A stretch of 63,726 bases of DNA, the filler included, from Octopus bimaculoides (taxonomy: Eukaryota), in assembly GCF_001194135.2 (NCBI RefSeq). It is 9 parts of 8 records of this genome, joined end to end, with 100 filler letters (N's around TTAATTAATTAA, not from the genome) between each part and the next. Parts side by side here need not be neighbours in the genome. Positions count along the whole stretch, not along the records: positions 36,035 to 41,801 come from NW_026369154.1; 8 more parts are not named here. One strand, given 5' to 3'. The position numbers and the translations under genes are program-made. This document shows positions 36,035 to 41,624 of the stretch, one piece after another (position 1 is the first letter of the stretch; each line of letters begins with the position of its first letter). The notes beneath the pieces were generated by a model. The model was not told the origin of the DNA, searched no databases, and was given only the letters and a program-made list of their open reading frames with translations.

Positions 36035-39000
36035 AACGAACAAAAGAACGAACGAGCGTACGTACATTAGAATGAACAAACGAACGAACGTAGGCACTTG
36101 TGAACGAAAGAAAGTTCGAACGAACAAACAAATGAACGTACGTACGTCGGAACGAACGATCGAAGGAACGAACGAAACAACGAATGTACGTACGTACGTT
36201 CATAAGAACGAAGTAACGAACTAACGTACGTACTTACGTAGGTTCGTACTTGCGTATGTGCGTAAGAACGTACAAACAAACGTACATACGAATGAACGAA
36301 CTAGCAAAAGAACCAGCGAACGAACGAAAGAACTAAAGAACGACCGAATGAAAGAACGTACGTGTGTACGTGCGAAGAAACGAATAAGCGACACGTGGAA
36401 CAAATGAAGGTACATTTGTACGTACGTTCATACGTCAGAATGAAGGAATGAACGAACGTAAGTACGTACGAACTAACGAAAGAACGAACGTATGTACGTA
36501 CGTAAGTACGGACGAACGATCGTAATTGCGTACGTAGGTACAAACGAACGAACGAAAGAACAAATGTACGGACGTACGAGCGATCGTATGTACGTACATA
36601 CGAACGGACATACGTACGTATGTATGTATGTACGAACGTTCAAACGAACTAACGAGAGAACGTACGTGCGTACGTACCAAGAAACAAACGTACGTACGAT
36701 GGAGCGAACTAAGGAACGTGCGTACATACGTCCGTATGTACGAACGAACGTACGTCCGAACGCAGGTACGTACGAACGAACAAAAGAACGAACGAACGTA
36801 CGCACTTGTGAACGAAAGAAAGTTCGAACGAACAAACAAATGAACGTACGTACGTCCGAACGAACGATCGAAGGAACGATCGTAATTGCGTACGTAGGTA
36901 CAAACGAAGGAAAGAACGAACGAGCGATCCTACGTACGTACATACGAACGAACGGACGTACGTACGTTTGTATATACGAACGTTCAAACGAACTAACGAA
37001 AGAACGATCGAAGGAAAGAACGTACGTGCGTACGTACAAAGAAACAAACGTACGTACGATCGAGCGAACTAAGGAACGTACGTACGTTCGTAGTACGTAC
37101 ATTAGAATGAACGAACGTACGCACTTGTGAACGAAAGAAAGATCGAACGAACAAACGAACGTACGTACGTCCGAACAAACGAACGAACGATCGAAGGAAC
37201 CAACGAACGTACGTACATACGAGAGAATGAGCGTACGTACTTACGTACGTTCGTACTTACGTACGTTCGTACTTACGTACGTTCGTACTTACGTATATAG
37301 GAACGTACGACCAAACGATCGAAAGAAGGAACATACGTACGTACGTAAGAACGAACGATCGTAGGTATATACGAACGAACGAACGAAGAAACGAAATGAA
37401 TAAACGAACGAACGTTGGTACGTACGAACGAAAGTACGTAGTACGTACATTAGAATGAACAAACGAACGAACGTACGCTCTTGTGAACGAAAGAAGGATC
37501 GAACGAACAAACATATGAACGTACGTACGTCCGAACGAACGAACAAACGACCGAACGATCGAAGGAACGAACGAAACAACGAACGTACATACATACGAAC
37601 GAACGAACGTACGTGATTACCTACATTCGTAATGCGTATGTGCGTAAGAATGTACAAACGAACGTACATACGAAGGAACGAACTAGCGAAAGAACGAACG
37701 TACGTACGTACCAGCGATCGCACGTACGTACGTACGAACTAACGAACTACCNNNNNNNNNNNNNNNNCGAACGTACGTACGTACGAACTACCGAACTACC
37801 GAACGAATGAACGTAAGTGCTTACGTACCAAGAAACATACGTACGTACGATCGAGCGAAATAAGGAACGTACGTAAATACGTCCGTACGTACGAACGAAC
37901 GTACGTCTGAACGTAGGTACGTACGAAGGAACAAAAGAACGAAGGTGCGTACGTACGTAGTACGTACTTTAGAATGAACAAACGAACGAACGTACGAAAT
38001 TGTGAACGAAAGAAAGATCGAACGAACAAACAAACGGACGTACGTCCGAACGAACGAACGAAACAACGAACGTACGTACATACGAACGTACGTACCTACA
38101 AACGTACGTTCGTACTTACGTATGTACGTAAGTACGTACAAACGAAGGAACAAACTAGCGAAAGAACGAACGAACGAGAGAAATAACGAATGACAGAACG
38201 AAAGAACGTACTTGTGTACGTACGAAGAAAAGAACGAACTAACAAACGAAAGTACGTTTGTACGTACGTTCATACGTAAGAATGAAGGAATGAACGAAAG
38301 TAAGTATGTACGAACGTACGTACGTACGTATTACGTACATTATAATGAACAAACGAACGAATGTACGCACTTGTGAACGAACGCACAAATGAACGTACGT
38401 ACGTCCGAACGAAAGAAAGAACGAACGAACGAAACAACGAACGTACGTACATACAAAACGTACGTACGTGCTTACGTACGTTCTTACTTGCGTATGTGCG
38501 TAAGAACGTACAAACGAACGTACATACGAAGGAACGAACTAGCGAAAGAACTAACGAACGACCGAATGAAAGAACGTACATGTGTACGTACGAAGAAACG
38601 AACGAACGAACAAACGAAGGTACGTTTGTACGTACGTTCATACGTAAGAATGAAGGAATGAACGAACGTAAGTACGTACGAACGAACGTGCGTACGTATG
38701 TAAGAACGAACGACCAAACGATCGAAGGAACGAACGTACGTAAGAACGAACGAACGATCGTACGTACATACGAACGAACGAATAGACGAAATGAATACAC
38801 GAACGAACGTAGGTACGTACGAACAAACAAAAGAACGAAGGTACGTACGTTCGTAGTACGTACATTAGAATGAGCGAACGTACGCACTTGTGAACGAAAG
38901 AAAGATCGAACGACAAAAATAAATGAACGTACGTACGTCCGAAAGAACGAACGATCGAAGGAACGAACGAAACAACGAACGAACGTACGTACGTACGTGC

Positions 39001-41624
39001 TTACGTATGTTCGTACTTGCGTATGTGCGTAAGAACGTACATACGAAGGATCGAACTAGCGAAAGAACTAACGAACGATCGAACGAAAGAACGTACGTGT
39101 GTACGTTCGAAGAAAGGAACAAACGACACAACGAACAAACGAGGGTACGTTTATACGTACGTTCATACGTAAGAATAAAGAAATGAACGAACGTAAGTAC
39201 GTACGAACGAACGTACGTACGAATTGCGTACGTATGTACGAACGAACGATCGAAGTAACGAACGTACGTACGTACGTAAGAGCGAACGATCGTACGTACA
39301 TACGAACGAACGAACGAAGAAACGAAATGAATAAACGAGCGAACGTACGTATGTAAGAACGTACGAACGTACGAAGGAACTAACGATAGAACGTAGATAC
39401 GCACGTACGTACGAACGAACGAATTGAACTACGTACGTACGTAATTACGTATGTACGAACGTACGTAAGTACGTCCGAACGAGCGAAAGAACGAACGTAT
39501 GTACGTACGTAAGTACGAAAGAAGGAACGAACGTATGTACGTACGAACGATCGTACGTACATACGAACGAACGTACTTACCTATGTACGTACGAACGTAC
39601 ATACGGAGGAACGAACGAAGGAAAGAACTAACGAATGACCGAACGAAAGAAGGTACGAAGAAACAAACGTACGTACGTACGATCGAGCAAACGAAGTAAT
39701 GTGTGTACATACGTCCGTACGTACGAGCGAACGTACCTCCGAACGTAGGTACGTACGAACGAAAACGTACGTACGTATGACGTGCGTATGTACTTGCGTA
39801 CGACGTATGTACGTACGTACGTGTGTACGTACATACATGCGTACATACGAACACACGGACGAACGAAAGAACGAAGCAAGTAACAAAAGGTGATACGTTT
39901 GTACGTAGGTTCAAACTTAAGAAGGAACGAACGTAGGTACGTACGAACGGTCGAACCTGCGTACGTACGAACGAACTAAAGAACTAACGTACGTACGTAG
40001 ATAAGTACGTAACGTACCTAAGTACGTACTCACGAATGAACAAACGAACGGACATACGTACGTACCTACGAACTAACGAAAGAATGAACAAACAAACGTA
40101 CGAACGAACGTACCCACCAACGAACGAATGTACGTACGTACGTACGAATGAATGTACGTTCGTACGAACGAATGAACGAGCGAAAGTACGTACTTAAGTA
40201 CGAATGAACGAACAACGAACGAACTTACGTACGGACGAAGGAATGAGCGAACGGAAACATATCCGTACGAACGAGCGAATGTACGAATGAACGATAGTAC
40301 GAACGAACGAACGAAGAAAAGAAATGAAGGAACGAGCGAACGTATGTACAAACGTACGAACGTACGAAAGAACGAGCGTACGTACGTACCTACGAATTAA
40401 CGAACAAACAACCGAACGAACGAAACAACGAACGATCGTGCGTACATACGAACGAACGTACGTACGTAGTTCGTACTTGCGTATGTACGTAAGAACGTAC
40501 AAACGAACGTACATGCGAAAGAACTACCGAACGACCGAACGAAAGAACGTACGTGTGGTCGTACGACGAAACGAACGAACAAACGAAGGTACGTTTGTAC
40601 GTACGTTCATACGTAAGAATGAAGGAATGAATGAACGTAAGTACGGACGAACGAACGAACATATGTACGAACGAACGACCAAACGATCGAAGGAACGAAC
40701 GAAAGAACGAACTACGTACGTAAGAACGAACGATCGAACGTACATAGGAACGAACGGACGTACGTAGATGTGTGCGTATGAACGAACGAACGGACGTGCG
40801 TAAATACGAACCTAAGTACTACGTACGAATGAACAAATGAACGTACATACGAACGAACGACCGAACGAACCAACAAACGAATGACCGAACGAACGAACGA
40901 CCGAGCAAATGAACAAACGATCAACGAACGAACTTACGTACGAACGAACGAACTTACGTACGAACGAACGAACGACCGAACATACGAAATAACGAACGAA
41001 CGTACGTTGGTAGGTACGAAAGAACGAGAGAACGAACGTACGTACGGATGTACGTTCGCAAGTACTTACGTACGAAGGAATGAACGAACGTACGTAAAAA
41101 CGAAGGACGAACGAACGTACGTTCGTACGTAAGTACAAACGAACTAACGATCGAACGTACGTATGAGCGAACGGAATTATATACATATGTCTGTACGTAC
41201 GAAAGAACGAACGATAGTACGCACGTACGTATGAAGGAACGAATGAACGGAGAAACGAAATGAATGAATGAACGAACGAACTAAGGATTGAACGTACGCA
41301 CGTACATACCAACGAACGAACGAAAGAAAGAACGTACGTACGTAATAACGTATGTACGAACGCAAGAACGAACGTATGTAGTACGTAAGTACGAACGAAC
41401 GATCGTAATTGCGTACGTGGGTACGAACGAACGTACGTACGTGCGGACAGACGAACGATCGAACTTACGTACGTACGAACTATCGTACGTACATACGAAC
41501 GAACGAACGTACGGACATACGTGCGAACGTACAAACGAACGTACATACGAAGGAACGAAAGAACGAACGAAGGAAAGAACTAACGGACGAAAGAACGTAC
41601 ATGCGTACGTACGAAGAAACAAAC
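36035..41624. repeat. Complex CpG-rich satellite built from AACG/TACG tetramers with higher-order repeats
   Basis: About 5.6 kb; landmark CACTTGTGAACGAAAGAAAG or close variants at 36095, 36803, 37122, 37478, 37997, 38368, 38885; other landmarks are co-periodic at about 370 and 520 bp. Confidence 0.95.

What the first reader, a model, noticed from the sequence alone, without database searches (positions are those of the whole stretch)
36035..41624. 5.6-kb CpG-saturated AACG/TACG satellite with hidden 370/520-bp higher-order structure
Seen: a CpG in most tetramers in an otherwise CpG-poor window; strong A-over-T strand skew; dense palindromes (CGTACG, TACGTA, CGATCG). Three landmarks recur in fixed order: CACTTGTGAACG (37997, 38368, 38885), TACTTGCGTATGTGCGTAAG (38485, 39014) and AAGAATGAAGGAATG (38278, 38646, 39171), giving units of about 370 and 520 bp that blur toward 41.6 kb. 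Inference: a cryptically simple satellite amplified as a higher-order unit, possibly with a chromatin, methylation or centromere-like role. I do not recognise it as a described family.
Basis: partly seen in the sequence, partly recalled or inferred. Interest (0 to 1): 0.72.

Follow-up and report, generated by a model that had tools for sequence, protein, structure and literature searches.

The report
CpG-rich tetranucleotide-derived mosaic satellite array
This is a real but ordinary kind of non-coding satellite DNA: a 5.6-kb array that grew from the 4-base motif (A/T)ACG, drifted, and was then re-amplified in blocks of about 320 to 710 bases. Its source organism and any function remain unknown.

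Summary
Window 36035-41624 is one head-to-tail array in a 4-nt register: 1377 tetramers with only 27 register slips. AACG makes up 27% and TACG 22% of tetramers, 60% carry CG at positions 3-4, CpG o/e is 3.14 and AT skew about 0.43.

A long-period structure is real. Stringent self-alignment gives 39 matches scoring at least 40 (best 153). Composition-matched Markov simulations give fewer than 1 per run (maximum 48).

It is not a regular 370/520-bp repeat. It is a mosaic of five modules (a, b, e, d, f) forming units of 708, 319, 356, 519, 371 and 517 bp. Cores are 85-91% identical, and the structure is densest in 36035-39400.

- **ORFs:** they are a composition by-product.
- **CpG decay:** there is no excess of CpG transitions, and C and G are no better conserved than the A at position 2.
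- **Assembly gap:** it is flanked by near-identical 33-mers (31/33), and 16 N breaks the 4-nt register. It is probably an unmerged overlap or an unresolved local duplication.
- **Relatives:** none were found in any reachable collection or paper. No eukaryotic repeat library was available.

Best reading: a slippage-born satellite re-amplified by unequal exchange. A centromere or methylation role is untested.

The parts
36035..41624 (+). Tandem array built on the 4-nt register (A/T)ACG. It is cut on the left by the piece edge and ends sharply on the right.
   Evidence: 1377 tetramers and 27 register slips, AACG 27%, TACG 22%, CpG o/e 3.14. All long repeats are direct; the best minus-strand score is 26.
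36058..36765 (+). Unit U1, modules a-b-f-(spacer)-d, 708 bp between A landmarks. Landmark A is at 36095, B at 36247 and C at 36436.
36766..37084 (+). Unit U2, modules a-f-d, 319 bp. Its start lacks the ATTAGAATG motif found in the other units.
   Evidence: Segment 36079-36171 against 36787-36879 is 97.8% identical.
37085..37440 (+). Unit U3, module a, then a local 16-mer tandem, then module e, 356 bp.
37237..37290 (+). Exact local tandem of GTACTTACGTACGTTC (about 3.4 copies), at the place that landmark B occupies in other units.
   Evidence: and direct reading.
37441..37959 (+). Unit U4, module a, part of b, the assembly gap, then d. It measures 519 bp as assembled.
37719..37800 (.). Assembly gap (N at 37752-37767) with its two flanking 33-mers, 37719-37751 and 37768-37800.
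   Evidence: The flanks match 31/33 end to start, and each is the other's best match in the array. The background rate for such a match is 1e-4. The CG register is 3 on the left and 0 on the right, so a 16-nt gap breaks the 4-nt register.
37960..38330 (+). Unit U5, modules a-b, 371 bp.
   Evidence: Segment 37939-38331 against 38310-38699 is 85% identical, score 153.
38331..38847 (+). Unit U6, modules a (38331-38460), b (38461-38690) and e (38691-38847), 517 bp. It served as the reference for the module map.
38848..39377 (+). Unit U7, modules a-b-e. It is the last complete unit.
   Evidence: Segment 38387-38824 against 38921-39360 is 82% identical, score 146.
39378..41624 (+). Distal part of the array. 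The tetramer register and CpG density are the same, but only islands of the modules remain: d at 39671-39763, b at 40452-40657, e at 40662-40756 and 40914-41044, f at 41383-41437, and part of b at 41525-41624.
41625..41801 (.). AT-only (TA)n/(TTTA)n microsatellite flanking the array, cut by the piece edge.

Best explanation
This is a non-coding satellite or complex tandem-repeat array from a eukaryote-like genome.

Shown: the whole 5.6 kb keeps a 4-nt register on the motif (A/T)ACG. The motif has drifted by about 15-25% per position. Segments of 60-260 bp (modules a, b, e, d, f) recur in the same orientation and in a partly fixed order, forming units of 319-708 bp with cores 85-91% alike.

Inferred history: replication slippage expanded a mixed (AACG)n/(TACG)n microsatellite. 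Point changes then created landmarks. Unequal crossing-over or tandem segmental duplication re-amplified blocks several hundred bases long. Slippage continued, giving indels in multiples of 4 and a fresh 16-mer tandem.

The CpG load and the A/T skew are by-products of the founding motif. (TACG)n is its own reverse complement and AACG is not.

The array most likely has no sequence-specific function and persists as heterochromatin-type repeat DNA. The lack of CpG decay suggests that it is not methylated in the germ line of its host, or that the host barely methylates.
For: - **Register and motif:**
- **Long repeats above chance:** 39 matches with score at least 40 (top scores 153, 146, 124). Order-4, -6 and -8 Markov simulations give fewer than 1 per run, with a maximum of 48.
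- **Orientation and layout:** all repeats are direct, and long diagonals are visible in the dot plot.
- **Module map and unit alignments:**
- **Core identity:** 85-91%, against a background mean of 46% and maximum of 64%.
- a recurring 3-nt register slip (TAG) lies just before each unit start, at 37091, 37439, 37958, 38329 and 38854.
- **Slippage signature:** 26 of 34 gaps between units are multiples of 4, and there is an exact 16-mer tandem at 37237-37290.
- **Not coding:** the longest open frames are 217 (+) and 261 (-) codons. Simulated sequences give means of about 170 and 320. Rfam returned nothing.
- **No CpG decay or protection:** CpG transitions run at 0.16-0.18 per site against 0.14-0.23 at non-CpG C and G. 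Conservation is 75% for C at position 3 and 81% for G at position 4, against 85% for A at position 2.
Against: - The source organism, the genomic copy number and the chromosomal position are unknown, so 'no function' is a default and not a result.
- Only one locus was seen, and it is cut at the left edge.
- The substitution counts are small (57 CpG columns) and the copies are not independent.
- A short-read assembler may have mis-joined modules. The gap with overlapping flanks shows that it struggled here.
- The unit lengths (319-371, 517-534, 708) lie loosely near multiples of about 177 bp, which could hint at chromatin phasing. No 177-bp sub-repeat was found.
Confidence: 0.78

Rival explanations
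1. The array is a centromeric or pericentromeric satellite whose units position CENH3 or heterochromatic nucleosomes.
For: It is a tandem, one-orientation, multi-kb array with long-period units. The unit lengths lie loosely near 2, 3 and 4 times about 177 bp. The array is also rich in short palindromes and hairpins; the single-strand fold z-score is -3.9.
Against: No 150-190 bp sub-period appears in the k-mer lag spectrum. Units are only 85-91% alike and irregular, with no gradient of similarity with distance, unlike actively homogenised centromere cores. The hairpin signal follows from clustered, self-complementary TACG runs. Chromosomal position is unknown.
Confidence: 0.1
2. The array is a subrepeat region of a larger unit, such as an rDNA intergenic spacer or the internal tandem array of a transposon, rather than a free-standing satellite.
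For: A mosaic of several subrepeat types with variable combinations, and a total length of a few kb, is typical of such regions. One end of the array is sharp.
Against: The piece holds no rRNA or other Rfam match and no protein-like ORF beyond what composition predicts. The only flank is an AT microsatellite. No relatives were found.
Confidence: 0.08
3. The long-range order is partly an assembly artefact: a chimeric path through a repeat graph, or a collapsed array.
For: The gap has near-identical 33-mers on both sides, and a 16-N length breaks the 4-nt register. The piece contains many exact repeats of 31-62 nt.
Against: The longest exact repeat inside the piece is 62 nt, shorter than common read lengths. 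The copies differ by 9-15%, so they can be told apart. The module order a-b-(e) recurs consistently.
Confidence: 0.15
4. The array encodes a repetitive low-complexity protein with repeats of the FVRS/YVRT or NERT type.
For: ORFs reach 244 aa on the minus strand and 212 aa on the plus strand. The protein database holds FVRS-rich predicted proteins.
Against: Open frames are no longer than in composition-matched simulations. Indels between copies are multiples of 4, not 3. Frames are open on both strands. The database hits are translated microsatellites at 35-55% identity with no domain.
Confidence: 0.02

Closest known systems
Human satellites 2 and 3 (HSat2/HSat3), diverged (CATTC)n pentamer arrays with long-range periodicities (PMC4022460; details from my own knowledge)
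   Same: A very short founding motif is still visible throughout. It has diverged by point changes and carries a longer, cryptic, subfamily-like periodicity. The array runs in one orientation and resists standard tandem-repeat finders.
   Different: The motif has 4 nt, not 5, and contains a CpG in every ideal unit. Only 5.6 kb were seen, against megabases. The units here are an irregular mosaic. There is no evidence for a pericentromeric location.
Bkm-type satellites with interspersed (GATA)n/(GACA)n (own knowledge)
   Same: The array is made of two tetranucleotide variants that differ at one position and alternate in short runs. Here T-type runs average 3.3 tetramers and A-type runs 4.4, against 1.7 and 2.4 expected at random.
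   Different: The motif is different and CpG-rich. A several-hundred-bp repeat layer is present here. A sex-chromosome association is unknown.
Classical hierarchical satellites in Southern's model, such as mouse major satellite and guinea-pig alpha satellite (own knowledge)
   Same: The inferred history is the same: a short oligonucleotide repeat diverges and is then re-amplified as a longer unit by unequal exchange.
   Different: Those satellites have a regular unit and a very high copy number. Here the unit length varies from 319 to 708 bp and the copy number is unknown.
CpG-containing microsatellites of AT-rich, CpG-rich genomes such as Apis mellifera (PMC3152781)
   Same: A CpG-bearing short motif persists next to AT-only microsatellites. 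This is expected where CpG decay is weak.
   Different: Those are short simple repeats. This array is 5.6 kb with a second repeat layer. The host identity is a guess and was not tested.

Membership tests
Satellite DNA / tandem array | Head-to-tail copies in one orientation over several kb | tested here: met
   All significant self-matches are direct, and the best minus-strand score is 26. The array is at least 5590 bp.
Satellite DNA / tandem array | High copy number in the genome, usually at several loci | not testable with these tools
   No reads and no source genome were available. No other copy was found in any collection.
Higher-order repeat (HOR) satellite, alpha-satellite style | Long-period units more similar to each other than the background of the basic repeat | tested here: met
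   39 matches scored at least 40, against fewer than 1 in Markov nulls. Cores are 85-91% identical, against a background mean of 46% and maximum of 64%.
Higher-order repeat (HOR) satellite, alpha-satellite style | Uniform HOR length and near-identity (about 95% or more) between successive HOR copies | tested here: not met
   Units are 708, 319, 356, 519, 371 and 517 bp with different module content. Identity is 85-91% with no gradient with distance.
Cryptically simple, microsatellite-derived satellite (HSat2/3 or Bkm kind) | A founding motif of 6 nt or less recognisable along the whole array, with its register conserved | tested here: met
   1377 tetramers with 27 slips. Position conservation is W 96.5%, A 85%, C 75% and G 81%.
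Centromeric satellite | Association with CENH3/CENP-A at the primary constriction | not testable with these tools
   This needs ChIP or FISH.
Centromeric satellite | Nucleosome-sized monomer of about 150-190 bp | tested here: inconclusive
   No excess of 20-mer matches at lags of 150-200. The unit lengths only loosely fit multiples of about 177 bp.
CpG island (Gardiner-Garden and Frommer criteria, own knowledge) | G+C of at least 50% and CpG o/e of at least 0.6 over at least 200 bp | tested here: not met
   The o/e of 3.14 meets the criterion, but G+C is 0.40-0.47 throughout. It is a repeat, not unique promoter-type DNA.
Protein-coding repeat | Open frame longer than composition predicts, with indels in multiples of 3 | tested here: not met
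rDNA intergenic spacer subrepeats | Flanked by rRNA genes | tested here: inconclusive
   There is no rRNA in the piece. The left flank is missing, and the right flank is only 177 bp of AT repeat.

The most novel reading that the evidence does not exclude
The array could be one locus of an undescribed, abundant satellite family whose CpG-in-every-tetramer design and palindromic TACG runs are kept by selection. It might serve, for example, as a centromere-associated or methylation-nucleating block in an AT-rich genome. AACG and ACGT are among the rarest tetranucleotide repeat motifs in surveyed genomes, which would make such a family distinctive.
Probability: 0.08. Interest if true: 0.55.

Novelty: new member of a known kind. 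Interest (0 to 1): 0.25.

Why it matters
If the family is truly uncatalogued, it adds a clear example of the route from microsatellite to satellite in which both layers are still legible in one 5.6-kb stretch. It would also be a handy cytogenetic or assembly-quality marker for its host.

Its CpG load, with no sign of decay, makes it a cheap read-out of whether that genome methylates repeats in the germ line.

It does not open a new mechanism. The architecture has been textbook satellite evolution since Southern's model and the HSat2/3 work.

Tried and rejected
- **TRF:** it sees only periods of 4 and 16 and some short local arrays. It misses the long units because of indels and 10-15% divergence.
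- **Global autocorrelation:** register slips blur it.
- **The repeat finder:** the 4-nt background swamps it.
- **Rfam:** no match.
- **Exact 20-mers in viral contigs and in prokaryotic genomes:** nothing the first time. The one hit in the second genome scan (L007) is a chance match in GC-rich bacterial DNA.
- **Metagenome scan with landmark A plus flank:** five hits, all in AT-rich contigs that are not satellite, so chance matches.
- **(WACG)6 in viral contigs:** 92 contigs, all with microsatellites of 200 bp or less.
- **Exact-protein look-ups of two window ORFs:** not on record.
- **Protein homology search with the 205-aa minus-strand ORF:** only translated FVRS-type microsatellites at 35-55% identity. 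Two of them were inspected (L006, L100) and are unrelated short compound microsatellites.
- **Full-text searches for 16-mers of the array:** zero papers.
- **Motif-word literature searches:** general context only.
- **Promoter and terminator scan:** the terminator-like hairpins are a consequence of TACG palindromes followed by CGTT runs on the minus strand, and are not evidence of transcription units.
- **Second protein search and the representative-library search:** not run. They return no organism or context and could not change the verdict.
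Full report
**1. What is there**

The piece is window 36035-41801. Positions 36035-41624 form one continuous array, and 41625-41801 is an AT-only (TA)n/(TTTA)n microsatellite. The array begins at the piece edge, so its true length is at least 5.6 kb.

Its composition is A 2238, G 1322, C 1122, T 892. It holds 835 CpG, an observed/expected ratio of 3.14, while CA, GC, GG and CC are three- to four-fold depleted. Distances between successive CpGs are almost always 4, 8, 12 or 16.

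A dynamic-programming parse tiles the array into 1377 tetramers with only 27 register slips. AACG makes up 27% and TACG 22% of tetramers, and 830 tetramers carry CG at positions 3-4. Position 1 is A or T in 96.5%, position 2 is A in 85%, position 3 is C in 75% and position 4 is G in 81%.

CpG density is flat at 13-16 per 100 bp along the array.

The A-over-T skew (about 0.3-0.57 in sliding windows) follows from the motif. (TACG)n is its own reverse complement and (AACG)n is not. T-first and A-first tetramers come in runs averaging 3.3 and 4.4 tetramers, against 1.7 and 2.4 expected at random. This explains TRF's weak 16-nt consensus GAACGAACGTACGTAC.

**2. Is the long-period structure more than chance?**

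Yes. With a stringent +1/-3 self-alignment, the real array yields 39 matches at lags over 100 with a score of at least 40. The top scores are 153, 146 and 124. Sequences simulated from order-4, order-6 and order-8 Markov chains of the array itself give 0.3-0.8 such matches per run, with a maximum score of 48.

All the matches are direct. The best inverted match scores 26. A dot plot shows long diagonals. The significant matches cover 67% of the array.

- A (CACTTGTGAACG) is at 36095, 36803, 37122, 37478, 37997, 38368 and 38885.
- B is at 36247, 38113, 38485, 39014 and 40474.
- C is at 36436, 38278, 38646, 39171 and 40615.

**3. Anatomy**

Alignments of the units and a module search resolve five recurring modules:
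- a, 38331-38460, holds landmark A.
- b, 38461-38690, holds landmarks B and C.
- e, 38691-38847.
- d, 36640-36790.
- f, 36500-36560.

Every unit starts with module a and then varies:

| Unit | Modules | Length (bp) |
|---|---|---|
| U1 | a-b-f-d | 708 |
| U2 | a-f-d | 319 |
| U3 | a, 16-mer tandem, e | 356 |
| U4 | a, part of b, gap, d | 519 |
| U5 | a-b | 371 |
| U6 | a-b-e | 517 |
| U7 | a-b-e | about 530 |

Beyond 39400 only islands of the modules remain: d at 39671, b plus e at 40452-40756, e at 40914, f at 41383 and part of b at 41525-41624.

The a-b cores are 85-91% identical at aligned positions and show no gradient with distance. U1 and U7, which lie 2.8 kb apart, are 89% identical. 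The neighbours U5 and U6 are 88.5% identical. Random in-register 300-bp pairs average 46% with a maximum of 64%.

A 3-nt slip (TAG) lies just before each unit start, at 37091, 37439, 37958, 38329 and 38854. It is therefore an inherited feature of the unit. Gaps between units are multiples of 4 in 26 of 34 cases. In U3, an exact 16-mer (GTACTTACGTACGTTC) is repeated about 3.4 times where landmark B should be.

The whole array, however, is an irregular mosaic and not a uniform higher-order repeat.

**4. The assembly gap (37752-37767)**

The last 33 bases on the left (37719-37751) match the first 33 bases on the right (37768-37800) at 31 of 33 positions, end to start. Each 33-mer is the other's best match anywhere in the array. 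Only 1 in 10,000 pairs of 33-mers in the array match this well.

The CpG register is 3 (mod 4) on the left and 0 on the right, so a gap of 16 breaks the 4-nt register. The flanks are therefore either an unmerged contig overlap with two differences or the edges of an unresolved local duplication. Continuity across the gap is not established, and the 519-bp length of U4 should not be trusted.

The longest exact repeat inside the piece is 62 nt. Ordinary reads could in principle resolve the rest of the array.

**5. What it is not**

- **Not coding.** ORFs reach 244 aa, but stop-free frames are a property of the AACG, TACG, CGTT and CGTA tetramers. The longest open frames are 217 (+) and 261 (-) codons, against means of about 170 and 320 in composition-matched simulations. 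Indels also come in fours, not threes.
- **Not a known RNA family.** Rfam gave no match.
- **No evidence for structured DNA or RNA.** The single-strand fold is more stable than dinucleotide shuffles (z = -3.9), and terminator-like hairpins are enriched on the minus strand. Both follow from clustered self-complementary TACG runs and do not argue for function.

**6. CpG**

Among paralogous units, transitions per site at CpG C and G are 0.175 and 0.158. At non-CpG C and G they are 0.136 and 0.226.

In the tetramer spectrum, position 3 shows C>T 128, C>A 135 and C>G 87. Position 4 shows G>A 154, G>T 79 and G>C 29.

There is no sign of the several-fold CpG transition excess that methylated germ lines produce (established knowledge). 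C and G are also not conserved better than the A at position 2. The simplest reading is that the CpG load is inherited from the founding motif. It is neither eroded by methylation nor protected by selection. The counts are small and the copies are not independent, so this is an indication only.

**7. Relatives and identity of the host**

I found no relative in any collection I could reach:
- Exact 20-mers found nothing in viral contigs. In prokaryotic genomes they found nothing related. The one hit (L007) is a chance match.
- Five metagenome hits to a landmark 20-mer lie in DNA that is not satellite.
- (WACG)6 occurs in 92 viral contigs, but only as microsatellites of 200 bp or less.
- Two window ORFs are not on record.
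- A protein search returned only translated FVRS-type microsatellites at 35-55% identity.
- Full-text searches for 16-mers of the array found no paper.

No eukaryotic nucleotide database or repeat library was available, so I cannot say whether the family is catalogued. The host is unidentified.

The AT-only flank and the undecayed CpGs fit an AT-rich, weakly methylating eukaryote. CpG-bearing short repeats are rare in most taxa, with Apis mellifera and Ostreococcus as exceptions (PMC3152781). AACG and ACGT are among the rarest tetranucleotide motifs in cnidarian surveys (PMC4226868). This is context and not an identification.

**8. Mechanism and verdict**

The most likely history is the classical one:
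1. Slippage expands a mixed (AACG)/(TACG) microsatellite.
2. Point changes create landmarks.
3. Unequal exchange or tandem segmental duplication re-amplifies blocks of several hundred bases in varying combinations.
4. Slippage continues at the 4- and 16-nt levels.

The register, the modules and the indel pattern are shown. The order of events, and the view that the array is functionally neutral repeat DNA, are inferred.

The rivals cannot be excluded without reads and cytology, and have little positive support. They are a centromeric role, a subrepeat region of an rDNA spacer or transposon, and partial mis-assembly. Coding is effectively excluded.

The closest known kinds are HSat2/3 (PMC4022460), Bkm GATA/GACA arrays and Southern-type hierarchical satellites. 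This array works like them. It fails the test for a regular alpha-satellite-style HOR, because unit length and identity are not uniform.

It is of a well-known kind, has an unusual CpG-rich motif, and has no evidence of function.

Noticed in passing
window 37237-37290: An exact 16-mer, GTACTTACGTACGTTC, is repeated about 3.4 times inside unit U3, at the place that landmark B occupies in other units. It looks like a recent local slippage event layered on the older array.
   Followed up: partly
window 41625-41801: This is a pure A/T microsatellite, (TA)n mixed with (TTTA)n. It joins the 44% G+C array at a sharp junction (41624/41625) and is cut by the piece edge. It is the only non-array flank available and gives no clue to the host beyond AT-richness.
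   Followed up: partly
window 37091, 37439, 37958, 38329, 38854: The same 3-nt register slip (TAG within CGTAGTACG) lies just before the start of five successive units. As a result the CpG register rotates from unit to unit, and the unit lengths are not multiples of 4.
   Followed up: yes
window 36079-36171 against 36787-36879: This is the most similar pair of segments in the piece (97.8% over 93 bp, with 55 nt exact). It is much closer than the 85-91% typical of other copies, which suggests a more recent duplication or a conversion between U1 and U2.
   Followed up: no
L052 1338-1560, L063 2195-2400, L090 12403-12546 (viral contigs): Short (AACG)n/(CGTT)n compound microsatellites of 200 bp or less occur in some phage or giant-virus contigs. 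L052 and L063 share the same flanks. They are unrelated to the window's array.
   Followed up: partly
L100 5150-5310 (ENA contig ctg26133, sample ERZ25067556): This is a 160-bp compound microsatellite, (TTCG)n followed by (CGTACCTT)n and (CGTACGTT)n, translated as a predicted 139-aa protein. It illustrates how such repeats enter protein databases as FVRS/YVRT proteins.
   Followed up: partly
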